64,000 nucleotides of DNA, from the sequence record MT366760.1. One strand, given 5' to 3'. The stretch's first letter is position 1; each line of letters begins with the position of its first letter. Of this stretch, positions 32,554-50,703 are shown piece after piece. The notes under the pieces are model-generated. The model saw only the letters and a program-made list of their open reading frames with translations, was not told where the DNA came from and ran no database searches. The position numbers were made by a program, and so were the translations under genes.

Positions 32554-33033
32554 TTACTTAGACTTCGATGAACTTTCTTTATAAGTCATCAACCAAGCGT
32601 CACCTTCAGCGTCATACATTGGGCACAAGTGATTCTTAGTAAAGCCAATTGCTTCATAAACACCGATAGCTCTTTCGTTTTTATCGGCGACATAAAGAAC
32701 TGTTAGGGGTGCAAAGGTAATCGCGTATGCAGTAAGTGCGTAACCCAAACCAAGTCCTTCCCAATCTTTATGAATGAATAAGCTTAGTAAGTGAGCACGC
32801 TTCTTCTCTACACGTAGCGTCAACATTGCTACGACTTCACCGAGACCAGTGCGAACCAAGTATAAGTCATCACCCTCTTCAATTGCGTCTTCGAGATAAG
32901 TGATGGAATCGAGTTCGGGGTCTTCACGAAGTGTTCGTAGTTCATGAATATCTTCGCGTGAACGGATAACGTCAACTAAGAAACCATGTTCGTCGTTAGC
33001 GTTACCCAATATTAGAGGAATGGGTTGTTCCAT
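32554..33033 (-). CDS. GNAT acetyltransferase (RimI-like)
   Basis: LFIHKDWEGLGLGYAL (AcCoA motif A), NERAIGVYEAIGF (motif B). Confidence 0.85.
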   Translation of the reverse strand: MEQPIPLILGNANDEHGFLVDVIRSREDIHELRTLREDPELDSITYLEDAIEEGDDLYLVRTGLGEVVAMLTLRVEKKRAHLLSLFIHKDWEGLGLGYALTAYAITFAPLTVLYVADKNERAIGVYEAIGFTKNHLCPMYDAEGDAWLMTYKESSSKSK

Positions 33034-33038
33034 GTGTG

Positions 33039-34187
33039 TTACTCCGCATCTAATAAGAAGGTATGGTCACATTGTTTACCTTCGAAGTTAGTAGCAACTA
33101 GACGTTCATTACCGTTCTCGTCAGTTATTACTTTAGCGTAATCAGGTTGGATAGGCATCTTACCTAAACCACCAATACCATCCAAAATGAATGTAGGCAT
33201 TGCAGGACCTGATATCCAACCGCGCAACTTGTGAATGATTTCAAGAGTGCGATGATAGTTAACTTGAATGTGACTATTACCTGGAGCAGGATCCATAGTG
33301 TATACGTAATAGGGTCTTACACCATGTGACATAAGTTCCATGAATAGTTCTTTCAAGATTACGGGGTCGTCGTTGACACCTTTCCATAGTACGCTTTGGT
33401 TACCAACAGGAATACCGCCACGGGTCAACATTCGAATATGTTTGATGAATAGTGGTGTAATCTCCTTCGGGTGATTTACCTGAATATTAACTAGAGTCAC
33501 ATCGTGCTTGTGCAGGATATCTACTAGCTCTTGGTCAATACGAGTAGGAAGATGTACGGGTAGTCGTGTGCCGATGCGTAGGATCTTTAAGTCTGGACGC
33601 GCTTCACGAATCATACCAAGTATCTTATCCAATTTAGCATTCGGGAACATTAAAGGGTCACCACCGGATAGTAGTACGTCTTCAATGTTCTTGTTTTCAC
33701 GTAACCATTCAACACCGTTACGAATCTGAGTCATATCAATATGAGCATCAGGGTCTAGAACAATACGCTTTCTTGTACAATGACGGCAGAGTGCAGCACA
33801 TATTGTGTTCATAAGGAACAGTACGCGCTGAGGATAACGGTGTGTGATAGAAGTCCCTGGGATTTCCATGTGATGCTCACCTAACTGGTCACCTTCTTCG
33901 TGTGGTGCGATGTGTCGTTCTGCTTCAGTCGGTAGGAACTGTAAGCGGATTGGACAATTAGGGTCATTTTCATCCATCAGTTGAGCAAGGTATGGCGTAA
34001 TTGCCACTTCAGACTCTTGGTAGAATGAATCATCAACACGAGGAACATTATTCATCACTAGCTCTGCGTGTCCGTTTGTTTTAAGTCGGCGGTTATAGAC
34101 CTTTGTCCATGGAGTGTTCTCCACGTCGTAATTCATAAGCTCTTCACGTGTAGCGAAAGGAGCCCCTGTCATTGCAAGTAGTGACAT
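33039..34187 (-). CDS. kamA: lysine 2,3-aminomutase (radical SAM/PLP, KamA/AblA/EpmB family)
   Basis: HRYPQRVL, CAALCRHCTRKR, LLSGGDPL, RIGTR, NQSVLWKGVND, PYYVYTMD, PTFILDGIGGLGK (PLP Lys). Confidence 0.9.
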   Translation of the reverse strand: MSLLAMTGAPFATREELMNYDVENTPWTKVYNRRLKTNGHAELVMNNVPRVDDSFYQESEVAITPYLAQLMDENDPNCPIRLQFLPTEAERHIAPHEEGDQLGEHHMEIPGTSITHRYPQRVLFLMNTICAALCRHCTRKRIVLDPDAHIDMTQIRNGVEWLRENKNIEDVLLSGGDPLMFPNAKLDKILGMIREARPDLKILRIGTRLPVHLPTRIDQELVDILHKHDVTLVNIQVNHPKEITPLFIKHIRMLTRGGIPVGNQSVLWKGVNDDPVILKELFMELMSHGVRPYYVYTMDPAPGNSHIQVNYHRTLEIIHKLRGWISGPAMPTFILDGIGGLGKMPIQPDYAKVITDENGNERLVATNFEGKQCDHTFLLDAE

Positions 34188-34240
34188 TGTTCGTATCCTT
34201 GTTGTGTTAGTGGGGCTGCAATGAGCCCCTTATTATCAAT

Positions 34241-36334
34241 TTACAATAATAGTAGTTTAGGTGCAAACTCGTGATTGTGGTCGAATAGCATACCAATATG
34301 AGGTTCTTCACGGAACGCACCGTACAACACGTTCTGTTGACGTGCTACGTGGATGGCTAGAACGTAAGCATCTTGTGGTGAAGTGTCTGAGTAACCTTGA
34401 CCGATACCGTAACGGGTGTTCGAATCTGCGATTGCGTAGTCAGCACCACAGAATGAAGCAGCATCAATCAAGTCGAAACCACAATCGTCTTCGGAGAAGT
34501 AGTTGAATAGTGATCTTGTTACACAGTAGTCTGCTTCACCACCACCGCAAAGCGGTACGGTATAGATAGACACACCACATGAGAAGCGAGCACGCCATTC
34601 AGGGTCGATGTGTTTCTTAGCTTCTAAGTGTTCGAGTACTACGGGTAATGGACGACCCATCTGACGGGTTAGTGTTGAGTTGTTTGAACAACCCATTCTG
34701 ACCATCCATTCAGTGAAGTAAGGAACGTCATCAACTACCATAAAGCTTGCGTCAATCCAACCGAACAGACCATCTACTTCTTTGTGAAGTGAACGCATCT
34801 TCTCGGCTAGTTCTTCTACGATTGGATAGTTTTGAATCTTGGTATCGTGCAGCGTTGTAGTATCGCCACCTTTACCACCCGTGTCATTGTGCATCAGCTT
34901 ATTAACTTCCCACAAGATACACATTGGTTGTACGTGGTCTTCGTTAATCAGGAAGCTAACGTTGAATTCGTTGTCTCCGCGACCTAGATATTGTTCGATG
35001 AATAGCGCACCACCATTCAAGAGGTTTGGTAATGTTAATTCGAAACCATCTTTATCGAAAATATCAATGAAGTGAGTCTTCAGATATTTAACTGCGATCT
35101 TATCCGTTGGGATACGGTCTTTTTTCGCGTGCCAATCTTCTAGGGACTTGACGACGATTGATGCGGGTACGTTAAAACCAATTGCTTCTGCACATTTGTG
35201 ACCGAATACACGGTTACGTTCCAACGCACGGGCGTCCTGAGTATGGAAGTGAGTCAGGTAGTCGAGTAACGGTGGTACAATTTCTTCGTTGTAGCCCAAC
35301 GTTGAGAAGTATTGACCGCGTTCGTAATCACCTACACGTTCCATCAGCTCGATGAATTCAGGGTCATCAAAGTCTACACAGTTAGGTAGTTCTGATGGTT
35401 CGATGTCGGGGAACAACTCACGTAGTTGGTGCATGTTAACTTGAGGAATGGTAACTAGTTGTACGTCAGCAATACCTTCTGAGGTATTACAATTGTAACG
35501 TGTTGCACTAGTACCACCTGAACCTTCTTCTATTCGAAGGTGGACAATTTTATCGCAGTTGATACCGTCTTCTACCAATAGGCGAGCCTGAGCGATGTAA
35601 TCGTATTGCTTGCGTAGTCGAAGTTTCGGCATGTTCTGGGGTTCACTACGTTCATTAACTTCTGCGTTACCAAGAGGCATCATGAAGTCAACGTATTCAC
35701 GGGAATCTAGACCTTGCCAAATATCAACCCATTCCTGAGTGTCATAAATAGGTCGGGATAGCTTGTAACCCGCAAGTACGAAGTTACTTTGATCTTCGTC
35801 ACTTAAATTAGCAAAGAACAACGTAAACATCCCATCATCTTTTTCAACATGTGCCACATGTGAGATATGTGATGTGAGCATCGGTACAAGTTTGGTCTGC
35901 GCAAATGGAATTGAAGGATACGTTGCTTCATCACGTAGCCCTTGGAGTGTGATAAAGTCAGCAGGTTCCATTGGTCGTAGGTTGTAGAGTGGTGAACCAC
36001 TAGACCAACCAGATATCATTTGCTGCGACTCGTAAATAATAGGGTCACCTGAGTGAACGGTGTAGGGTGCCAGACGTTGTTGGTAGATAGTCGGAAAGTC
36101 TGGGATTGTTGATACCCCACCGAATTGTGCAAAGTGGACTACGCAATCTGATAGCCCATTGTTGTAGATCAAAGTTGTAGGGAACTGAGCTAGGTAGTCC
36201 GATAGCAGTGGGATAAAATAATCACCTCTGACGTAACGACCAGGACTGCTCAAGTAATTCGCTGTTGTCACACGTTTGCCTGTGAAGTCTAATTTCTTCA
36301 CCATGTCAAATAGTGGGTTTAATAATGATTTCAT
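34241..36334 (-). CDS. PurD-like ATP-grasp amide ligase with ~330 aa unknown N-terminal region
   Basis: LERNRVFGH, IAVK, FIEQYLG, EVNKLMHNDTGGKGG, FTEWMVRMG parallel the PurD ATP-grasp motifs. Start moved to 36334 (GAGG RBS). Confidence 0.7.
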   Translation of the reverse strand: MKSLLNPLFDMVKKLDFTGKRVTTANYLSSPGRYVRGDYFIPLLSDYLAQFPTTLIYNNGLSDCVVHFAQFGGVSTIPDFPTIYQQRLAPYTVHSGDPIIYESQQMISGWSSGSPLYNLRPMEPADFITLQGLRDEATYPSIPFAQTKLVPMLTSHISHVAHVEKDDGMFTLFFANLSDEDQSNFVLAGYKLSRPIYDTQEWVDIWQGLDSREYVDFMMPLGNAEVNERSEPQNMPKLRLRKQYDYIAQARLLVEDGINCDKIVHLRIEEGSGGTSATRYNCNTSEGIADVQLVTIPQVNMHQLRELFPDIEPSELPNCVDFDDPEFIELMERVGDYERGQYFSTLGYNEEIVPPLLDYLTHFHTQDARALERNRVFGHKCAEAIGFNVPASIVVKSLEDWHAKKDRIPTDKIAVKYLKTHFIDIFDKDGFELTLPNLLNGGALFIEQYLGRGDNEFNVSFLINEDHVQPMCILWEVNKLMHNDTGGKGGDTTTLHDTKIQNYPIVEELAEKMRSLHKEVDGLFGWIDASFMVVDDVPYFTEWMVRMGCSNNSTLTRQMGRPLPVVLEHLEAKKHIDPEWRARFSCGVSIYTVPLCGGGEADYCVTRSLFNYFSEDDCGFDLIDAASFCGADYAIADSNTRYGIGQGYSDTSPQDAYVLAIHVARQQNVLYGAFREEPHIGMLFDHNHEFAPKLLLL

Positions 36335-36336
36335 AA

Positions 36337-37479
36337 TTATGCCTCGTCGCCTAATACTACGACACTTTCTGGAAGTTCCCAACCGTTTTTCTCTGAGTAG
36401 AGCGGTGGTGTTAAGTAACCTGGGTTTTCACGACACACACAGATTGTCGTGTTCGTGTTATTGTCATTTACAATAAGGCGCTTGTATGTCTCGATACTTT
36501 CACCACCTGACACATTGGTACGGCAAGTTGGGTCAAGATAAAGCACTGGATGTTTTGAGTCTTCAATGTAGTACTTGACCATACTACCTAGCATTAGTGC
36601 GCCTACATTGTGGTGTGACTTATCACGAACATTAGCTTGGAAGAACGCGGTTACTTCTTTGTTTTCCGGATTGAAACGATTGACGAAGGAACCAATGGAA
36701 ATGATTTCATTAGTTTCTTTGTCAGTTACCACACAGAACTGAGTAGTACCCTTAGGCATATTGACGACACATGCCCACGCCCACATGGATTGGAGTAGAG
36801 CGTATTCGAATTCTAAGTAATCGGGGTACGACTTACGTAGTAGTTCGATGGTGCGTTCTTGAAGCGTACGTATATCTAGGAAACCACCACCATTGTATGA
36901 ATGAAGGTTACCGTGGAAGTATTCATCAAAGATATCTACGTGGTATCGGTCTTGGTTAAGTGCTTGACGAACTTTGTAACGGCGCTTCTTAGTCAAGGAT
37001 GCTAGGTACTCGTCGAATGTCTCGTGGTTTAAATTAGCCACGGGACTATTCAACCAAAGTAAGTTCTCTGATTTGTATTCGTGTGCATCAGATAACGTCA
37101 CTGTCTCTGTTGATAGCATGTTGTAGCCGTGAGAACCAAGTACTTCGAGTAGTGCTTTGCATGATTCTTCACAAACCAAGTCAGCTTGTGTGTAAGGTAA
37201 ATATGGATGACATAACACGTGTGATAGTGGTAGTTCCCATTCGGAGTCTTTACGTTCAGTACTGTGGACGAATGGACTAGGATTAAAACCCAAACCCGCT
37301 AAACGTCCCTCAGTAATCATAGTAATAGGAGTGTTAAGGGTAGCACCACAATTGAATTGACGTAGGTACGTGTCAAATGTGGAAATAACTTCACTGTTAA
37401 GTTCTGGAGTAAGTGTTGAGGAATAACCATGAAGTTTACACCAGTTGTATAGGTATTCTGTTATTGATACTGTTTTCAT
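36337..37479 (-). CDS. FemAB-like / Acetyltransf_6 GNAT-fold acyl- or aminoacyl-transferase
   Basis: TFDEYLASLTKKRRYKVRQAL signature; VGALMLGSMVKY. Confidence 0.65.
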   Translation of the reverse strand: MKTVSITEYLYNWCKLHGYSSTLTPELNSEVISTFDTYLRQFNCGATLNTPITMITEGRLAGLGFNPSPFVHSTERKDSEWELPLSHVLCHPYLPYTQADLVCEESCKALLEVLGSHGYNMLSTETVTLSDAHEYKSENLLWLNSPVANLNHETFDEYLASLTKKRRYKVRQALNQDRYHVDIFDEYFHGNLHSYNGGGFLDIRTLQERTIELLRKSYPDYLEFEYALLQSMWAWACVVNMPKGTTQFCVVTDKETNEIISIGSFVNRFNPENKEVTAFFQANVRDKSHHNVGALMLGSMVKYYIEDSKHPVLYLDPTCRTNVSGGESIETYKRLIVNDNNTNTTICVCRENPGYLTPPLYSEKNGWELPESVVVLGDEA

Positions 37480-37487
37480 TTTTAGTC

Positions 37488-38510
37488 CTATAGTGAAGTA
37501 CGGTCTTTGTTGTAACCGTGGTCACAAGCTTCAGGGATTAAGTCAAGTAGTTGTTGTGGGATGTCATTGTTGAATTGAATACCCTTATGGTATTTCTCCT
37601 CTTCACACCACATGCGCTTCCAATCATAGTAACCTACACCAAAGTTGTAGTATTTACAACCAAGTGCCTTAGCCAATAAGTATCCGTGGTAGAGTAGTAC
37701 GTTACCAATGTTGTTACCGACAGTACGGCGCGAGAAGTCCCAGTATAATTCTTCACCATTATCAGTTACGGAAAATACGGCGAGACCTGAACAGTCGCCT
37801 AGGTCAATTTCAGCAGTTATCCAACGGTCGAAATTGAATCCAGTGAAGAAGTTTAGGAAAAGTAATTGATCTTCGGATACTGTGTGATGTTTACCCGTAC
37901 TTTCCCAATACTTAAGGAAGTCTTCTTTGTAGCGTTCACAATCTGCGGCAATTTCATCAGTGTGATGTGGATGAGATACTTCTACACCTGCATTACGTAA
38001 TGTCGTAACGTCTACGGCATTGTACGCCTTGTTGATAATTGGTAATTGTGGGGTTTCAACAAGCTTCTTGAATGGGCGGTAGAAGCGTTTTAGGTTTTTC
38101 TCTTCAACGTTCATACGTAATGTCATCAGACCATGGTCGTGAGTAGACATTCCGAATTCTTCTAGGTTGAAACCTTTTGTCCAAAAGTTAACGTAGTCGT
38201 CAGCGGAGGACGATTCCCCCATGATGATTGTAATGAATTTAGTCTTGTCGTGCTCTATTTCATCACGAACAATCTGAATAGGCATTACGTTGTTATGGGA
38301 ATCACGCAGGAACACGGGTTCCGTACATCGGTAGTATTTAGAACCTTCGATTTCTTCGGCAGTTAGATAATAAAGACCACTATAACTAGGAATCTTCATA
38401 CCGCCTAAAGAATCAGTGCCGAGTTTATTAGTGTACCATTGTTGATCTACAACGTGACCGAAAGGTTCTTCAGCAATGTCACCATGTTTATTCATTACTT
38501 TAACTAACAT
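37488..38510 (-). CDS. second FemAB-like / Acetyltransf_6 GNAT-fold transferase
   Basis: IGNVLLYHGYLLAKALGCKYYNFGVGYYDWKRMW C-terminal signature. Confidence 0.6.
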   Translation of the reverse strand: MLVKVMNKHGDIAEEPFGHVVDQQWYTNKLGTDSLGGMKIPSYSGLYYLTAEEIEGSKYYRCTEPVFLRDSHNNVMPIQIVRDEIEHDKTKFITIIMGESSSADDYVNFWTKGFNLEEFGMSTHDHGLMTLRMNVEEKNLKRFYRPFKKLVETPQLPIINKAYNAVDVTTLRNAGVEVSHPHHTDEIAADCERYKEDFLKYWESTGKHHTVSEDQLLFLNFFTGFNFDRWITAEIDLGDCSGLAVFSVTDNGEELYWDFSRRTVGNNIGNVLLYHGYLLAKALGCKYYNFGVGYYDWKRMWCEEEKYHKGIQFNNDIPQQLLDLIPEACDHGYNKDRTSL

Positions 38511-39204
38511 TGTCTAACGCTCCCTGACTGTCCGTGCATTGTGAACAAATACCACAAGGTGGGTAGAACTCACAACTAATACGGTTTGAATAATCTTCAC
38601 CAAATGTACGACCTAGTGCAACTACTTGTTCTTTTGACATGTGCATTAGGGGTGTATCAATGACGAATGGTTTAGAGAACGATTGGAATAACAGTTCGTT
38701 CATCGTCTTAACGAAGTGAGGATTAATATCTGCACCGCGAGTTGCACCATTGGTACGAGTACCTACATCTAACTCAGGGTCATTTAGCTGAATACCAAAC
38801 GTCAGTTTATTACAACCTGCGTAGATTGCTTCGATTGATGCTTGTAGGAGGAATGCAGCATTACGACCTTCCAACCAAAACCAGTCAGGATGCTCAGCTA
38901 GTGAGTCACAATCTTCAGTTAGAGAATCACGGGAGAAACCTTGCTTTGGTTTGTACCCTTCATGGAAGACACCGAAGTCTGAGATATCGTGTCCGTTGCG
39001 TACCATGATTTCAGGATACGCAACTTCTAAGACGCGAGTAGAACAACCCCAGAAGTGTGCATAGTACTCCATGATGCGTTGTTGTTCTTCAAATACAGCT
39101 TGTCCATAGTTAACGAGGATAAGCATTTTAAGTTTGCCAGTGGCATTGATTAGGTGACCCGCGACGATGCTGTCAATCCCACCTGAGAATAATAGTGCGT
39201 TCAT
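38500..39204 (-). CDS. divergent QueC-like PP-loop ATP pyrophosphatase
   Basis: LLFSGGIDS, NYGQ, EGRNAAFL, TPLMHMSKEQVV, C-x5-CGICSQC; lacks the YPDC motif. Confidence 0.8.
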   Translation of the reverse strand: MNALLFSGGIDSIVAGHLINATGKLKMLILVNYGQAVFEEQQRIMEYYAHFWGCSTRVLEVAYPEIMVRNGHDISDFGVFHEGYKPKQGFSRDSLTEDCDSLAEHPDWFWLEGRNAAFLLQASIEAIYAGCNKLTFGIQLNDPELDVGTRTNGATRGADINPHFVKTMNELLFQSFSKPFVIDTPLMHMSKEQVVALGRTFGEDYSNRISCEFYPPCGICSQCTDSQGALDNVS

Positions 39205-39234
39205 TATAGTGCTCCTTTAGTTCACTATATTTAT

Positions 39235-39241
39235 TTTACAG
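39235..39241 (-). promoter_or_regulatory. CTGTAAA motif
   Basis: Directly after the queC terminator, 31 nt before the QueC-like ATG (AAGGAG RBS). Confidence 0.55.
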
Positions 39242-39244
39242 AAT

Positions 39245-39273
39245 AAAAATGGGCAGCAAGAGCCACCCATTTT
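39245..39273 (-). terminator. intrinsic terminator after queC
   Basis: AAAATGGGTGGC-TCTT-GCTGCCCATTTTT on the minus strand. Confidence 0.65.
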
Positions 39274-39283
39274 AAATTAGCGT

Positions 39284-40090
39284 TTAGCAGTCTTCTGGAC
39301 TAACGAATTCACTGTCAGACCCACCTTCAACTACCCACTGGTAGCGAGCACGTGCAGGGTCATCAATACCCGCTTCATCAAAACCACGCTTACGTAACAA
39401 GCAGCTATGACAAGAGCCACAACCTAGAACAACGTTACCGTTTTCACCACGAGTGAAATCTTTGCCGTTGTAACAGGTATGGGTAAAGCTGATAGCTTCC
39501 ATACATTCATCACCTAGCTCTTGTGCAAGTTCGACAGTAGCCTTCTTAGACAAGTGCATTAGTGGGGTTGTGATTTTAATCAAGTGATCTTCACCGAAGT
39601 CTTCTTCAAGGAACAATGCTGCATTAGTAGCTGCCTGTAACTTGTCGATGAAAACTTGGCGGCAATCTGGGTAACCACCGAAATCTTCTTCACAAACACC
39701 GGTAACAATGTGACGCAGACGATGTACGTAAGCACGGTTGCTAGCAATCGTAAGGAATACTAAGTTACGTGATGGAACAAATGTATTTTCCAAACCACCA
39801 GGGAGTGAGTCAGCATCTGCATATTGCTCAACCTTTTCGTTGCGGTTAGTCAGTGGGCTTGTACCCTGTAGGATATCGTGACCCAAAGCGATGATCTCAA
39901 ACGGAACTTGCGCACGGTCTGCAATTTTACGAGCCAATATTGTTTCAGTGATATGGCGTTGACCATAGTTGAAACAGATAGCACGAACGTTCTCACGACC
40001 ATATTCACGAATTGCCCAATGTAGACAAGTCGTTGAGTCTTGTCCGCCTGATAGTACAACGACTGCACCTTCTTTCATTTCATTGCTCAT
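39284..40090 (-). CDS. queC: 7-cyano-7-deazaguanine (preQ0) synthase
   Basis: VVVLSGGQDSTTCL, FNYGQRH, TFVPSRN, GGYPDCR, PLMHLSK, THTCYNG, GCGSCHSCLLRKRGF. Confidence 0.95.
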   Translation of the reverse strand: MSNEMKEGAVVVLSGGQDSTTCLHWAIREYGRENVRAICFNYGQRHITETILARKIADRAQVPFEIIALGHDILQGTSPLTNRNEKVEQYADADSLPGGLENTFVPSRNLVFLTIASNRAYVHRLRHIVTGVCEEDFGGYPDCRQVFIDKLQAATNAALFLEEDFGEDHLIKITTPLMHLSKKATVELAQELGDECMEAISFTHTCYNGKDFTRGENGNVVLGCGSCHSCLLRKRGFDEAGIDDPARARYQWVVEGGSDSEFVSPEDC

Positions 40091-40101
40091 TTTGTATTCC
40101 C

Positions 40102-41109
40102 TTACTGTTCGATGTGGCTTAGGTCGTCTTCTTCGTCTTCTTCATCTTCTTCGCGGATTTCAAGTAACGCGTTACGGAGTGAACAGATTAGAGACGTGCT
40201 GCTTAGATTTAGGTAGTCTGAATAGAACTTAACTTCATTCACGAACTTAACCTGTGGAATGATACCGCCTGCCCATAGGTTGTTATGTGTTAGTTCGTCA
40301 AACGCTGCTTTAATCGCTAGGTTATAGAAGTCACAGTAAACAACAATAGTATCATGTTCATGTTTAGAGAAGTAATCAACAAAGGTCTTTTTCAGACGCC
40401 ATTCGTACGGGATACCCGAATCATAGTGTGGCATAATAGCCCAAAGATCTTGAGGTACGATACCCAGTACGCCAGTCGCATTCGCAATGTAAGTATCTGA
40501 AGAACAACCAGTTGCTTCAAGGCAGTCAATAACTGCTGAGTGCATTGGTGCAGGGTACGGTTTGTCGGGTGCGCATGGAACAAGAACCAAATTACGTTTG
40601 GTTGGTGTATAATCGTCAAGAGTTTCGAAGTAATCCAAAACTTCTTTACGATGGAATGAACCATTGTTAGTAATGATGAACTCTTTACGCTCATGTTGTA
40701 GGTTCTTAGTGAGTTGTGGAAGTTTGGTCTCCCACTGCATATCACTTTTCCATAGTGCGTCCACCAACTCTGGGCGGAATCCACACACAACTTCGATAGA
40801 GGTACGGTCTAGGAATGGATAACGGCAGAACTGAGTTGACTTGTCTACGTTAAGTAAACGAGAAACTTGTTCGTCGTGCTCAAAGTGAACTTGAGGTGTA
40901 CTACAATCCGCACCTAAATAGTTAAGTAGTGGAACCCAAGAAGCGGGTGGTCGAGTAACCGTCCACGGCTCCGAAGACTCTGCTACCACTTTGAAGATAT
41001 CTAGGTATGAACCATAGCGATCTTCGTATCGACCACCCGATGGCATTTGGGATAAGTCGATGTGACGGTCTTCTTTATCAATGACCGTTTCTGAGGAGTT
41101 TACTGTCAT
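40102..41109 (-). CDS. archaeosine synthase ArcS/TgtA2 core (DUF5591)-like protein
   Basis: RKEVLDYF..YTPTKRNLVLVPCAPDKPY..H and GVLGIVPQDL..PHYD match the recalled ArcS core motifs PCSxxKPY and LGLVPREL..HYD. Confidence 0.7.
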   Translation of the reverse strand: MTVNSSETVIDKEDRHIDLSQMPSGGRYEDRYGSYLDIFKVVAESSEPWTVTRPPASWVPLLNYLGADCSTPQVHFEHDEQVSRLLNVDKSTQFCRYPFLDRTSIEVVCGFRPELVDALWKSDMQWETKLPQLTKNLQHERKEFIITNNGSFHRKEVLDYFETLDDYTPTKRNLVLVPCAPDKPYPAPMHSAVIDCLEATGCSSDTYIANATGVLGIVPQDLWAIMPHYDSGIPYEWRLKKTFVDYFSKHEHDTIVVYCDFYNLAIKAAFDELTHNNLWAGGIIPQVKFVNEVKFYSDYLNLSSTSLICSLRNALLEIREEDEEDEEDDLSHIEQ

Positions 41110-48820: not shown

Positions 48821-49471
48821 ATGGCGGGTTTCGGTAAGATAAATCCTGACCAAGGTAAGTACCGAGCAAGGTCAGGTAACTTGAATATATTACCACACCT
48901 CGATAGAAAGCTAGTAACTGAGTCACCACTAAAGACTCCCATCATTTTCTACACTGATGGCTCCTGTCTAGCGGACGATGGTTGTGGTGGGTTTAGTATC
49001 ACCCGATGGATTAAACACCCTAAAACAAAAGATACAATCGAAGTAAGTTCCTCGTGGTCATATTCAACAGACACCACTATATCAATCATGGAACTAGGTG
49101 CAGCACTGATAGCACTTAGACAAGTTGAGGGGACACAAAGACCAATCTACATTTACACCGACAGCCAATATGTTCAGAAGGGCGTCGAAGAATACCTAGC
49201 AGGTTGGGTTCGTAGTGGTCGTAGTTCACGTGGGGAAATAAAGAACCTAGGATTATGGCAGGAAATGGTAGACCTAATTAATAGGCACCATGTCGAATTC
49301 AGATGGGTTAAAGGTCACTCCGGTATAAAAGAAAACGACCGTGCTGATTTTTTGGCGGGTAATGGTCGTGCACTAGCTCTTAAGGAATCGGGGCTAGCGC
49401 ACAAAGTAAATGAAGACTACAGAATGATAGAAAATGAAGATGTACCTGGATTCATCTATCATAACTTATAA
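48821..49471 (+). CDS. rnhA: ribonuclease HI
   Basis: FYTDGSC, MELGAAL, IYTDSQYV, KNLGLW, WVKGHSG..ENDRADFLA. Confidence 0.95.
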   Translation: MAGFGKINPDQGKYRARSGNLNILPHLDRKLVTESPLKTPIIFYTDGSCLADDGCGGFSITRWIKHPKTKDTIEVSSSWSYSTDTTISIMELGAALIALRQVEGTQRPIYIYTDSQYVQKGVEEYLAGWVRSGRSSRGEIKNLGLWQEMVDLINRHHVEFRWVKGHSGIKENDRADFLAGNGRALALKESGLAHKVNEDYRMIENEDVPGFIYHNL

Positions 49472-49495
49472 ATAATAGGGGACTTTAGTAGTCCC

Positions 49496-49560
49496 TATTG
49501 GGAAGGGCACTCACCTCAGGTGTTACTGAGTTCAAAAGCGACCGAGTGTCTTTCCCAATA
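49496..49560 (+). ncRNA. candidate structured RNA: 17 bp stem with an inner hairpin, ending 1 nt before the tRNA-like gene
   Basis: TATTGGGAAGGGCACTC/GAGTGTCTTTCCCAATA (2 G-U pairs); CTCAG/CTGAG. Confidence 0.45.
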
Positions 49561-49561
49561 T

Positions 49562-49646
49562 GGTGTGGTAGTTCAACTGGATAGAACAGCAGGGTGCACC
49601 GTTAACAGACTGCCAGTTATTGGTTCAAAGCCAATCCACACCACCA
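49562..49646 (+). tRNA. tRNA-like gene (85 nt) with an 8-nt-expanded anticodon loop; identity uncertain
   Basis: Acceptor GGTGTGG/CCACACC + A + CCA; D arm GTTC/GAAC; T arm ATTGG-TTCAAAG-CCAAT; anticodon stem GCAG/CTGC. Confidence 0.8.
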
Positions 49647-49648
49647 TA

Positions 49649-49924
49649 TGCGACCTGCAACAGATTAAGTCGCAGACCGTTCCACTCAATATCTGTTGCA
49701 TTAAATCCAACGTACGCCAATACGTTGGTCAGGTCATGCCTCTGATGTCCTGGTAGTTATGTGGCTTACAGAAAACTCGTCCTATCGTCTAAAACTTAAG
49801 ACAGGGTTGGTGGCACGCCTCCCTAAACCCCGTGCCGTCATGAGAACCAACCTGAATATGGGTGCTTACCCGAATTCCCATCGGGGCGTGCGTCAACCGC
49901 AAATACAAGACTGTAAGTTTGGGG
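49649..49924 (+). ncRNA. candidate pseudoknotted structured RNA
   Basis: Multiple 6-10 bp stems, including an H-type pseudoknot at 49649-49700. Confidence 0.4.
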
Positions 49925-50056
49925 TACTACGAAAAACAGATGCATAGATACTGTGCATACCTTTACGCTGACAACGGTATGATTACTGTACCTTTACTAG
50001 ATAACTTTAAATATTATGTGGTGAATGAGAACGGCACCACGTTTGCTAAACTTTAA
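49862..50056 (+). CDS. possible small hypothetical protein (64 aa)
   Basis: Protein-like composition, ends just before the terminator; weak RBS and overlaps the predicted RNA stems. Confidence 0.35.
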   Translation: MLTRIPIGACVNRKYKTVSLGYYEKQMHRYCAYLYADNGMITVPLLDNFKYYVVNENGTTFAKL

Positions 50057-50062
50057 AGAAAT

Positions 50063-50095
50063 AAAAAGCGCAAACCCAAACGGGCTGCGCTTTTT
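50063..50095. terminator. bidirectional intrinsic terminator
   Basis: AAAAAGCGCA-AACCCAAACGGGC-TGCGCTTTTT. Confidence 0.85.
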
Positions 50096-50277
50096 AGTCC
50101 CTAATTACAGTGTTCCAAATATTCGTGCGAACTCCTGCATATTAACACCTGCTTGCTTCAGCTCTTCATCAAGCCGTGTAGCATTCGCTTGCTCAATACT
50201 TCTTCTCTCATCCGAAGCAGTTGCCGCTCTCTTTAATTTTCTACGGGCAATAGCAGCCGTATTAACTGTTCTTATAC

Positions 50278-50703
50278 TCACTTCTTAAGATCCTTCTTAA
50301 TTTCACGCCATAAACCCCTTAGATGTTTACACATACCTGCATACTCAACATGACGTTGTGTCCCGCTACCTTTTATATCTACATCTGAATAGTCATGTTC
50401 ACGGTAAGCTAATCCATTATCCTGAAGAAATGGTGCGAAGGTAAACTTGTGGTCACAGCAATCACAGTAAACCTCGAACTGGCTTTTATCAATGCGGACA
50501 CCCTTCTTAGTATCTACACAATTTTTACCATAAGCTTCCTTAGTTCGCTTGAACTTAATCTGTGCTTCGTATACTGCACCACCTGAACCCTCGAAGTCAG
50601 TTGAAAACAATACTGACTTCCTACTAACTGACATTTCCCATTCTTCTACGTCAGCACATCCGCGAACACCCTCAGTGTTTCTAAACAACTTGTTAATCTT
50701 CAT
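50278..50703 (-). CDS. SWIM-type Zn-finger protein
   Basis: VYCDC..F...MCKHL. Confidence 0.55.
   Translation of the reverse strand: MKINKLFRNTEGVRGCADVEEWEMSVSRKSVLFSTDFEGSGGAVYEAQIKFKRTKEAYGKNCVDTKKGVRIDKSQFEVYCDCCDHKFTFAPFLQDNGLAYREHDYSDVDIKGSGTQRHVEYAGMCKHLRGLWREIKKDLKK

What the first reader, a model, noticed from the sequence alone, without database searches (positions are those of the whole stretch)
49562..49646. tRNA with perfect acceptor, D and T arms but a 15-nt anticodon loop
SEEN: encoded CCA and intact arms, while the anticodon arm reads GCAGG-GTGCACCGTTAACAG-ACTGC, 8 nt longer than canonical. It contains CCGTTAA (Asn-like loop), but the A73 discriminator does not fit Asn, and it includes two palindromes (GGTGCACC, GTTAAC). 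KNOWN: GUN-anticodon tRNAs are queuosine targets, anticodon nucleases are common abortive-infection effectors, and tRNA-like folds serve as RNase P processing signals. INFERENCE: a decoy or nuclease-resistant tRNA, an aminoacyl donor for the Fem-like transferases, or a processing tag for the flanking RNAs.
Basis: partly seen in the sequence, partly recalled or inferred. Interest (0 to 1): 0.66.

Follow-up and report, generated by a model that had tools for sequence, protein, structure and literature searches.

The report
Phage tRNA-like RNA, oversized anticodon arm
Two related marine Vibrio phages each carry one tRNA-shaped gene whose anticodon loop is 15 letters instead of 7 and is almost identical in both, so it is a real, selected RNA that cannot read codons normally; its job is unknown.

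Summary
Window 49562-49646 (+) of Vibrio phage vB_VcorM_GR7B encodes an 85-nt cloverleaf with normal acceptor, D and T arms, A73 and CCA. Its anticodon arm has 4 Watson-Crick pairs, a G.A pair and a 15-nt loop.

It is not a private mutation or an assembly error. The only known relative, phage GR11A, has the same gene at the same place after RNase HI.
- The two copies differ at 22 of 85 positions.
- Twelve differences form six compensatory pairs, at least one in each of the four stems. No stem pair is broken.
- The 23-nt anticodon-arm core differs at one position (Fisher p=0.005).

It is the only tRNA-type gene in either genome. No further homologue turned up in nine related jumbo phages, IMG/VR, metagenomes or 185,579 prokaryote genomes.

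No tRNA-splicing endonuclease, RtcB or Rnl2-type RNA ligase was detected in either phage, so the 8-nt "intron" reading lacks machinery.

Both phages encode Fem/MprF-like double-GNAT proteins in their 7-deazaguanine DNA-modification cluster. Enzymes of this fold take amino acids from charged tRNA.

I read it as a selected, non-decoding tRNA mimic (about 0.8). My favoured role is a dedicated amino-acid carrier (about 0.3). A decoy or a processing signal remains open. Expression and charging are untested.

Other notes of this scan cover neighbouring features of this window and a related Xanthomonas phage. None that I saw describes this RNA on other DNA.

The parts
49562..49646 (+). tRNA-like gene, 85 nt: the whole cloverleaf including A73 and CCA
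   Evidence: ARAGORN. Sequence. Homologue in GR11A at L002 2244-2328, 75% identical without gaps. My covariance model R1 scores both copies at 111 bits.
49562..49568 (+). Acceptor stem, 5' strand. It pairs with 49636-49642.
   Evidence: Seven pairs in both phages. Pair 3-70 changes U-A to C-G.
49571..49587 (+). D arm (GTTC / GAAC) with a 9-nt loop that carries A14 and G18 G19
   Evidence: Two of its four pairs are compensatory between the phages.
49589..49613 (+). Anticodon arm: 4 Watson-Crick pairs (GCAG / CTGC), a G.A pair, and the 15-nt loop GTGCACCGTTAACAG
   Evidence: Sequence. The outermost pair changes G-C to U-A in GR11A.
49590..49612 (+). Near-invariant 23-nt core of the anticodon arm, CAGGGTGCACCGTTAAC(A/G)GACTG
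   Evidence: 1 difference in 23 positions here against 21 in 62 elsewhere; Fisher p=0.005. The one change (A to G) keeps a possible U-A / U.G pair inside the loop.
49619..49635 (+). T arm (ATTGG / CCAAT) with loop TTCAAAG
   Evidence: Two of its five pairs are compensatory. T54, T55, C56 and A58 are kept.
49643..49646 (+). Discriminator A73 and encoded CCA
   Evidence: Sequence. GR11A has A73 followed by CC-C-A.
49500..49556 (+). Long hairpin (13-pair stem) that ends 5 nt before the tRNA-like gene
   Evidence: Fold of 49472-50000, z = -4.78. It is not alignable with GR11A.
49761..49925 (+). Second conserved structured RNA in the same non-coding stretch
   Evidence: blastn against GR11A L002 3151-3317: 65% identity, E 1e-10. 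12 of 28 predicted pairs are compensatory. No Rfam family matches it.
50061..50099 (.). Two-way terminator-like hairpin that closes the non-coding stretch
   Evidence: AAAAAGCGCA...TGCGCTTTTT, seen in the terminator parts of weak Rfam alignments. The terminator scan reports only the inner part of it, on the - strand.
37488..38510 (-). Fem/MprF-like double-GNAT protein (340 aa) in the 7-deazaguanine cluster; a candidate user of a charged tRNA
   Evidence: AlphaFold2 model, pLDDT 79.5, pTM 0.79. Foldseek top hits are FemX (1xf8, E 3.9e-7) and aminoacyl-phosphatidylglycerol synthases / MprF. A metagenomic homologue is fused to QueC.
36337..37479 (-). Second Fem-like candidate (380 aa)
   Evidence: ESM Atlas: structure hits to Acetyltransf_6 / FemAB clusters at TM 0.54-0.62, and feature hits to Mig-14 / Acetyltransf_6 / LPG_synthase_C clusters. 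No Pfam hit.

Best explanation
This is a real gene for a tRNA-derived RNA that selection maintains and that does not decode codons in the normal way.

What is shown:
- The cloverleaf body and its tertiary-contact nucleotides are preserved by compensatory evolution.
- The enlarged anticodon arm is held almost invariant.
- It is the only tRNA-type gene in both phage genomes.

What is inferred:
- It is read through from the PolA-like / RNase HI genes on the + strand.
- Host RNase P cuts the 5' end, and host 3' trimming and the CCA enzyme finish the 3' end.
- It folds into an L shape.
- The invariant arm is the surface that a specific partner recognises. The arm is either a 15-nt loop, or an 8-layer stem (4 Watson-Crick pairs, G.A, G.G, U-A/U.G, G-C) capped by the 9-nt loop CACCGUUAA. 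The oversize keeps it out of ordinary ribosomal decoding.

My favoured specific role is a dedicated amino-acid carrier. A host synthetase would charge it, and its amino acid would be used by the phage's own Fem/MprF-like double-GNAT enzymes in the 7-deazaguanine DNA-modification cluster. Staphylococci keep special tRNA-Gly species for FemXAB in a similar way (my own knowledge), and phage Mu Mom takes glycine from Gly-tRNA to modify DNA (PMC13219725).

Probabilities: the general claim (a selected, non-decoding tRNA mimic) about 0.8; the carrier role about 0.3.
For: Conservation of the RNA:
- All 20 cloverleaf pairs hold in both phages. Six are compensatory, none is changed on one side only, and slid controls give 0-1.
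- The arm core has 1 difference in 23 positions against 21 in 62 elsewhere, p=0.005. The flanking non-coding DNA is unalignable.
- A73 and the two C's after it are conserved.

Place in the genome:
- It is the sole tRNA-type gene. GR7B has no RF00005 hit and GR11A has only this one.

Candidate partner enzymes:
- Two Fem/MprF-like folds lie in the deazaguanine cluster of the window. One has a GR11A orthologue and a QueC-fused metagenomic homologue.
- The same protein family occurs in Xanthomonas phage PhiXhv-12. That phage carries exactly one tRNA, tRNA-Asn(GUU), and an operon with an L/F-transferase.
- tRNA-dependent DNA modification has an experimental precedent (PMC13219725).
Against: - There are no expression data.
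- No synthetase identity set fits. There is no G3:U70 and no long variable arm. A73 disagrees with Asn (G73) and Cys (U73). The GUU, GCA and AAC triplets sit in a loop of the wrong size. These identity rules are from my own knowledge.
- As far as I know, FemX-type enzymes read mainly the acceptor end. The invariant anticodon arm would then be needed only for charging or for exclusion from the ribosome.
- The gene lies 11 kb from the transferases and on the other strand.
- Metagenomic contigs with the same enzyme cluster show no tRNA nearby, though they are short.
- Only two sequences are known.
Confidence: 0.3

Rival explanations
1. Decoy or inhibitor of a host tRNA-targeting factor, such as an anticodon nuclease or another tRNA-modifying toxin. 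The L-shaped body recruits the enzyme. The abnormal loop, which carries the anticodon-like triplets GCA and GUU, binds it without being productively cut, or soaks it up.
For: - The loop is invariant between two phages isolated on the same host strain, RE98. That fits mimicry of an invariant host target.
- It is the sole tRNA-type gene, so it is not there for codon supply.
- Phage tRNAs that counter anticodon nucleases are known (my own knowledge).
Against: - Known anticodon nucleases read a normal 7-nt loop, which a 15-nt loop mimics poorly.
- The GUU is preceded by C rather than U33.
- No host nuclease has been identified, and no host genome was available here.
Confidence: 0.2
2. Processing punctuation. 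The tRNA shape serves only as an RNase P / RNase Z cutting signal that releases the neighbouring structured RNAs, or stabilises the 3' end of the replication-gene transcript.
For: - It sits in a non-coding, highly structured tail of about 620 nt (z = -4.78). The tail lies between RNase HI and a two-way terminator-like hairpin.
- A hairpin ends 5 nt upstream.
- A second conserved RNA lies downstream.
Against: - A cutting signal needs only the acceptor and T arms, so it does not explain an almost invariant 23-nt anticodon-arm core.
- The immediately flanking hairpins are not conserved.
- The distance to the second RNA is about 115 nt in GR7B and about 820 nt in GR11A.
Confidence: 0.15
3. RNA-RNA pairing device. 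The self-complementary GGUGCACC in the loop makes kissing-loop dimers, or the loop pairs with another RNA. The tRNA body would then serve as a stable scaffold.
For: - ViennaRNA cofolding gives -17.9 kcal/mol for the loop duplex, against -0.5 to -2.3 kcal/mol for folds within one loop.
- An 8-nt and a 6-nt palindrome lie side by side in a 15-nt loop.
- GUGCAC is also the self-complementary hexamer of one HIV-1 dimerisation loop (my own knowledge).
- A similar GG(G)UGC...ACCCG followed by the palindrome GAAUUC sits in a conserved part of the second RNA.
Against: - The palindromes were noticed after the fact.
- With an invariant loop and two sequences, covariation cannot be tested.
- The only near-complementary site in the genome (one mismatch, inside CDS GR7B_00154) is not matched in GR11A and is probably chance.
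Confidence: 0.1
4. A true decoding tRNA. Either the 8 nt GTGCACCG are removed, or bulged out, to leave the loop UUAAC(A/G)G, which gives Val with anticodon AAC, U33 and a purine at 37. Or one of the other triplets is read despite the large loop.
For:
- The single variable loop position would then be purine 37, A or G.
- A73 fits Val (my own knowledge).
Against: - The insert sits at position 31/32, not at 37/38. There is no bulge-helix-bulge motif, and 8 nt is far too short for a group I intron.
- Neither phage has a detectable splicing endonuclease, RtcB or Rnl2-type RNA ligase.
- A34 tRNA-Val is not a bacterial type (my own knowledge).
- The insert itself is invariant, which an intron would not need.
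Confidence: 0.08
5. A decaying tRNA pseudogene with no function.
For: - There is no Rfam tRNA hit for the GR7B copy, and the gene is not annotated in the GR7B record.
Against: - Six compensatory pairs and no broken pair. The loop is more conserved than the rest, and the position is syntenic in a phage whose neighbouring proteins are only 40-55% identical.
Confidence: 0.03

Closest known systems
Ordinary phage-encoded tRNAs (Rfam RF00005)
   Same: A 7-pair acceptor stem, D and T arms with the usual conserved nucleotides (U8, A14, G18 G19, T54 T55 C56, A58), a 5-nt variable region and a discriminator followed by CC(A). The GR11A copy scores 56 bits.
   Different: The anticodon loop has 15 nt (17 unpaired) instead of 7, and no anticodon can be assigned. 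It is the only such gene in the genome. The GR7B copy does not reach any Rfam threshold.
Non-proteinogenic tRNA-Gly of staphylococci, used by FemXAB (my own knowledge)
   Same: A tRNA kept for non-ribosomal amino-acid transfer and held away from translation. Fem-type enzymes are encoded in the same genome.
   Different: Those tRNAs keep a normal 7-nt anticodon loop and escape translation through changes in the T arm. Neither charging nor use of this RNA has been shown.
Mom of phage Mu: tRNA-dependent DNA hypermodification (PMC13219725)
   Same: A phage GNAT-superfamily enzyme takes an amino acid from a charged tRNA to decorate DNA. GR7B has Fem-like GNATs inside a DNA-base modification cluster.
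   Different: Mom uses host Gly-tRNA-Gly, with no dedicated phage tRNA. The GR7B enzymes are double-GNATs and are not shown to act on DNA.
tRNA-like modules in other RNAs: YrlA / bacterial Y RNA, the tmRNA tRNA-like domain, T4 stable RNAs C and D, plant-virus tRNA-like structures
   Same: A tRNA shape reused for something other than decoding.
   Different: YrlA and tmRNA lack a free-standing complete cloverleaf. The Rfam YrlA hit is noise: 16.6 bits against a cut-off of 69, and it covers the upstream hairpin plus half of the gene.
Frameshift-suppressor and quadruplet-decoding tRNAs
   Same: An enlarged anticodon loop in an otherwise normal tRNA.
   Different: They have 8 or 9 nt, that is 1-2 extra, not 8 extra. 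A 9-nt loop arises here only if the extended-stem fold is right.
Intron-containing tRNAs (archaeal/eukaryal bulge-helix-bulge type, bacterial group I type)
   Same: Extra nucleotides inside the anticodon loop. ARAGORN can model an 8-nt 'intron'.
   Different: The position is wrong (31/32), there is no bulge-helix-bulge, the insert is too short for group I, no splicing enzymes were detected, and the insert sequence itself is conserved.

Membership tests
Canonical elongator tRNA (RF00005) | Cloverleaf with a 7-pair acceptor stem, D arm and T arm, and the conserved tertiary-contact nucleotides | tested here: met
   All pairs are present in both phages. U8, A14, G18 G19, T54 T55 C56, A58 and G46 are present.
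Canonical elongator tRNA (RF00005) | A 7-nt anticodon loop with U33 and purine 37 around a readable anticodon | tested here: not met
   The loop is 15 nt in both phages. ARAGORN gives '???' for GR7B and a forced, mismatched 'Cys' fold for GR11A.
Canonical elongator tRNA (RF00005) | Score at or above Rfam's gathering threshold (29 bits) | tested here: inconclusive
   GR11A scores 56 bits. GR7B has no hit even at E up to 10.
Canonical elongator tRNA (RF00005) | A coherent synthetase identity set (discriminator plus anticodon or acceptor marks) | tested here: not met
   A73 goes with the triplets GUU, GCA and AAC, there is no G3:U70 and no long variable arm. The comparison with E. coli identity rules is from my own knowledge.
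Intron-containing tRNA | Intron at 37/38 with a bulge-helix-bulge, or a self-splicing group I intron, plus splicing enzymes | tested here: not met
   The insert lies at 31/32 and is 8 nt. PF01974, PF01139 and PF09414 are absent from both phage genomes.
YrlA / Y RNA-like (RF02553) | Match to the family model at the gathering score (69 bits) | tested here: not met
   16.6 bits, E 6.7, covering the upstream hairpin and half of the gene.
Dedicated aminoacyl-carrier (non-proteinogenic) tRNA | A Fem/MprF-type aa-tRNA-dependent transferase is encoded by the same genome | tested here: met
   At fold level only. FemX and MprF are the top Foldseek hits for 37488-38510. FemAB / Acetyltransf_6 clusters are the structure hits for 36337-37479. 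The Pfam match is weak (PF13480, E 0.005).
Dedicated aminoacyl-carrier (non-proteinogenic) tRNA | The RNA is aminoacylated in vivo and used by the transferase | not testable with these tools
   This needs acid-gel or charge sequencing and enzyme assays.
Dedicated aminoacyl-carrier (non-proteinogenic) tRNA | The RNA co-occurs with the transferase family across genomes | tested here: inconclusive
   Family A6 is present in GR7B, GR11A and PhiXhv-12 out of 11 related phages. Each of the three has one tRNA-type gene. PhiXhv-12's is a normal tRNA-Asn. Phages without the family also carry tRNAs.
Anticodon-nuclease decoy tRNA | A host tRNA nuclease whose action the RNA blocks | not tested

The most novel reading that the evidence does not exclude
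A phage-encoded amino-acid carrier RNA that is kept off the ribosome. It would be a tRNA whose anticodon arm has been rebuilt so that it can be charged but cannot decode. It would feed the phage's Fem/MprF-like transferases, which decorate a 7-deazaguanine base in phage DNA. That would be the first dedicated viral tRNA for DNA hypermodification.
Probability: 0.25. Interest if true: 0.85.

Novelty: new variant of a known kind. Interest (0 to 1): 0.6.

Why it matters
Phage tRNAs are usually explained by codon supply or by escape from tRNA-cutting defences. Here the sole tRNA-type gene of two jumbo phages cannot decode normally, yet it is under clear selection, with the strongest constraint on the abnormal loop.

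If it carries an amino acid for DNA decoration, it would link three recent themes: tRNA-dependent DNA modification, 7-deazaguanine DNA and specialised non-translational tRNAs. If it is a decoy, it points to an unknown tRNA-directed defence in Vibrio coralliilyticus.

There is also a practical point. The GR11A copy is annotated as tRNA-Cys and the GR7B copy is not annotated at all. Both records are misleading.

Tried and rejected
- **More homologues.**
  - Exact-motif scans of IMG/VR gave nothing.
  - The metagenome scan gave one chance hit with no tRNA shape.
  - The scan of 185,579 prokaryote genomes gave three chance hits.
  - Model R1 found only ordinary 75-78-nt tRNAs, at 59 bits or less, in nine related jumbo phages.
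  - R1 found nothing in six IMG/VR relatives picked by capsid protein, or in contigs that carry the Fem-like gene.
  - RNase HI gave no relatives in IMG/VR.
- **Alternative fold.** In GR7B the lowest-energy fold replaces the D arm by the helix AACUGG / CCAGUU. GR11A cannot form it, so I rejected it.
- **CCG-UUAA-CGG mini-hairpin.** It forms in GR11A, but the middle pair is broken in GR7B.
- **YrlA.** Noise.
- **Queuosine target.** The U before the G is missing.
- **Loop target in the genome.** The exact motif occurs once per genome. The one-mismatch antisense site inside a CDS is not conserved.
- **Restriction-site avoidance.** None. GTGCAC occurs 16 times against 10.7 expected, and GTTAAC 38 times against 19.8.
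- **E. coli tRNA similarity.** None by blastn.
- **Phage CCA-adding enzyme.** None.
- **Second RNA in relatives or IMG/VR.** Its conserved motif was not found.
- **Neighbouring 141-aa gene.** It is a SWIM-like phage protein that also occurs in phages without the RNA, so it is uninformative.

Full report
**Where the window comes from.** The window is 100% identical to Vibrio phage vB_VcorM_GR7B (MT366760.1, 207,758 bp, host V. coralliilyticus RE98). Window position equals record position minus 62,000. The record annotates nothing between RNase HI (window 48821-49471) and a small minus-strand gene (50278-50703).

**The observation.**
- It has a 7-pair acceptor stem, a 4-pair D stem with a 9-nt loop that holds A14 and G18 G19, a 5-nt variable region, a 5-pair T stem with loop TTCAAAG, A73 and CCA.
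- The anticodon arm reads GCAGG-GTGCACCGTTAACAG-ACTGC. The fifth 'pair' is G.A, so there are four Watson-Crick pairs.
- ARAGORN finds this gene and no other in the window, and cannot name an anticodon.
- Rfam's tRNA model finds nothing in the window or in the whole GR7B record.
- In GR7B alone the lowest-energy fold is not the cloverleaf. It scores -25.2 against -20.5 kcal/mol, or -24.3 once the loop is allowed to fold. One sequence therefore could not settle the structure.

**The relative settles it.**
- A protein search with RNase HI and with the downstream gene finds one close relative, phage GR11A (MT366761.1), at 55% and 40% amino-acid identity.
- At the same place after RNase HI, GR11A has a gene annotated tRNA-Cys. 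It aligns with the GR7B gene without a gap.
- The two copies differ at 22 of 85 positions. Twelve of these lie in the four stems and form six compensatory pairs: one in the acceptor stem, two in the D stem, one in the anticodon stem and two in the T stem. No cloverleaf pair is changed on one side only, and all pairs hold in both. When the partner columns are slid by 1-3, only 30-41% of cells pair and 0-1 pairs are compensatory.
- The alternative helix of the GR7B lowest-energy fold cannot form in GR11A.
- The loop is not a private insertion. GR11A has the same 15 nt with one change, A to G.
- The 23-nt core CAGGGTGCACCGTTAAC(A/G)GACTG has 1 difference, against 21 in the other 62 positions (Fisher p=0.005).
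- The DNA on both sides of the gene cannot be aligned at all.
- Selection therefore acts on the cloverleaf and, most strongly, on the oversized arm.

**How the arm may fold.** RNAalifold adds two pairs inside the loop, U34-A46 (U.G in GR11A) and G35-C45. The only loop substitution keeps the first of them. This gives an 8-layer arm (4 Watson-Crick pairs, G.A, G.G, 2 Watson-Crick pairs) with the 9-nt loop CACCGUUAA. It rests on one event and is a suggestion only. The CCG-UUAA-CGG hairpin of GR11A is broken in GR7B. The 8-nt palindrome GGUGCACC could join two molecules (-17.9 kcal/mol). That is a property of the sequence, not evidence of use.

**Can it be a decoder?**
- With introns allowed, ARAGORN reads tRNA-Val(AAC) plus the 8-nt insert GTGCACCG at position 31/32 in both phages. 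Under that reading the variable loop base would be purine 37.
- The position, the length and the lack of a bulge-helix-bulge fit no known tRNA intron.
- Neither genome has a detectable splicing endonuclease, RtcB or Rnl2-type RNA ligase. Neither has a CCA-adding enzyme.
- The insert is itself invariant.
- The default ARAGORN calls, '???' for GR7B and 'Cys' for GR11A, come from forced folds with mismatched stems. The GenBank label tRNA-Cys is therefore not reliable, and A73 does not fit Cys or Asn (my own knowledge of E. coli identity rules).

**Distribution.**
- My covariance model R1 scores the two genes at 111 bits.
- In nine related jumbo phages it finds only ordinary 75-78-nt tRNAs of various types, at 59 bits or less. 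These phages are P. putida phage Aura, BCSR5, PhiXhv-12, RSL1, BcepSauron, Motura, PaBG, Lu11 and RHEph12.
- Motif scans of IMG/VR, metagenomes and prokaryote genomes give nothing or chance hits.
- Capsid-based relatives in IMG/VR have none.
- The family has two known members. In both genomes it is the only tRNA-type gene.

**Surroundings.**
- The gene lies in a non-coding, strongly structured stretch of about 620 nt (z = -4.78). It is on the same strand as the PolA-like and RNase HI genes.
- No sigma-70-like promoter is predicted on the + strand, and a two-way terminator-like hairpin lies at about 50061-50099. Read-through transcription is my inference.
- A second island, 49761-49925, is conserved with GR11A (65% identity, E 1e-10). 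It has 12 compensatory pairs of 28 and no Rfam match.
- That island is about 115 nt from the tRNA-like gene in GR7B and about 820 nt away in GR11A. The two elements are co-conserved but not tightly joined.

**The Fem-like lead.**
- Earlier notes of this scan describe a 7-deazaguanine cluster at 32554-41109.
- Pfam and PDB sequence searches leave two of its genes open. There is only a weak Acetyltransf_6 hit.
- For 37488-38510 I collected 13 relatives with HMMER, one of them fused to QueC, and built a model (pLDDT 79.5, pTM 0.79).
- That model's best PDB matches are FemX and the aminoacyl-phosphatidylglycerol synthase domain of MprF (E 4e-7 to 1e-4). Acyl-CoA-using N-myristoyltransferases rank lower. 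TM-scores are only about 0.4, so this is fold-level evidence.
- For 36337-37479 the ESM Atlas gives FemAB / Acetyltransf_6 structure neighbours at TM 0.54-0.62.
- The first family is also in GR11A, in metagenomic ArcS-core / QueC / QueC clusters and in Xanthomonas phage PhiXhv-12.
- PhiXhv-12 has an L/F-transferase operon and exactly one tRNA, a normal tRNA-Asn(GUU). That is a single anecdote.
- tRNA-dependent DNA modification is now an established chemistry for phage Mu Mom (PMC13219725).

**Verdict.**
- Shown: a conserved, structured, tRNA-derived RNA gene with an abnormal and nearly invariant anticodon arm, which is the sole such gene in two phages.
- Inferred: it is processed like a tRNA, it does not decode, and its arm is a recognition surface.
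- Favoured role: a dedicated amino-acid carrier for the Fem-like enzymes (about 0.3).
- Other roles: decoy (0.2), processing signal (0.15), pairing or dimerising scaffold (0.1), true decoder (0.08), relic (0.03).
- About 0.14 is left for something not listed.

**Limits.** Only two sequences are known. No host genome was available.

Noticed in passing
window 49761-49925 (+); L002 3151-3317: A second conserved structured RNA of about 165 nt with at least five covarying helices (12 of 28 predicted pairs compensatory) and no Rfam match. Its conserved block TCCTATCGNCTAAAACTTAAG occurs once in GR7B and once in GR11A. It is absent from nine related phages and from IMG/VR.
   Followed up: partly
window 49594-49607 and 49858-49884: The tRNA-like loop (GGGUGCACC + GUUAAC) and a conserved part of the second RNA (GG(G)UGC..ACCCG + GAAUUC) share a similar motif: a G/C-clamped UGC element followed by a 6-nt palindrome. 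This may be a common binding site or a coincidence.
   Followed up: no
window 37488-38510 (-) and 36337-37479 (-): Two genes without Pfam hits in the 7-deazaguanine cluster have Fem/MprF-like double-GNAT folds. A metagenomic homologue of the first is fused to QueC. The order ArcS-core, QueC, QueC, Fem-like recurs on metagenomic contigs (L041-L043).
   Followed up: partly
L002 2244-2327 (GR11A record 69743-69826): GenBank annotates this gene as tRNA-Cys. The call rests on a forced ARAGORN fold with a mismatched anticodon stem, and the discriminator is A73, so the label is unreliable. The GR7B copy is not annotated at all.
   Followed up: yes
L038 151-226 (-) and L040 (PhiXhv-12 record 115739-124996): Xanthomonas phage PhiXhv-12 has a single tRNA, tRNA-Asn(GTT), just downstream of its capsid gene. 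It also has an operon with an L/F-transferase, a relative of the GR7B Fem-like protein, and sugar enzymes.
   Followed up: partly
L021 1361-1432 (-) (Ralstonia phage RSL1): An odd 72-nt tRNA with a 6-nt anticodon loop ('tRNA-??? (ac)') lies between tRNA-Gly and tRNA-Pro. It is unrelated to the GR7B RNA.
   Followed up: no
GR7B record 139300-139313 (-), outside the window; L036: A one-mismatch copy of the loop motif (GGTGTACCGTTAAC) lies on the minus strand inside CDS GR7B_00154. Its mRNA could pair with the loop over 13 of 14 nt. About 0.07 such hits are expected by chance over both strands. No equivalent site exists in GR11A.
   Followed up: partly
window 49500-49556 (+): A 13-pair hairpin with an inner 5-pair hairpin ends 5 nt before the tRNA-like gene. 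It is not conserved in sequence in GR11A.
   Followed up: partly
L002 1900-3500 (GR11A): GR11A has about 1.6 kb with no long annotated gene between RNase HI and a glutaredoxin gene. This is more than twice the length of the GR7B gap. Only the tRNA-like gene and the second RNA are shared.
   Followed up: no
whole window: GTTAAC occurs 38 times against 19.8 expected from base composition, so the loop palindromes are not avoided restriction sites.
   Followed up: yes
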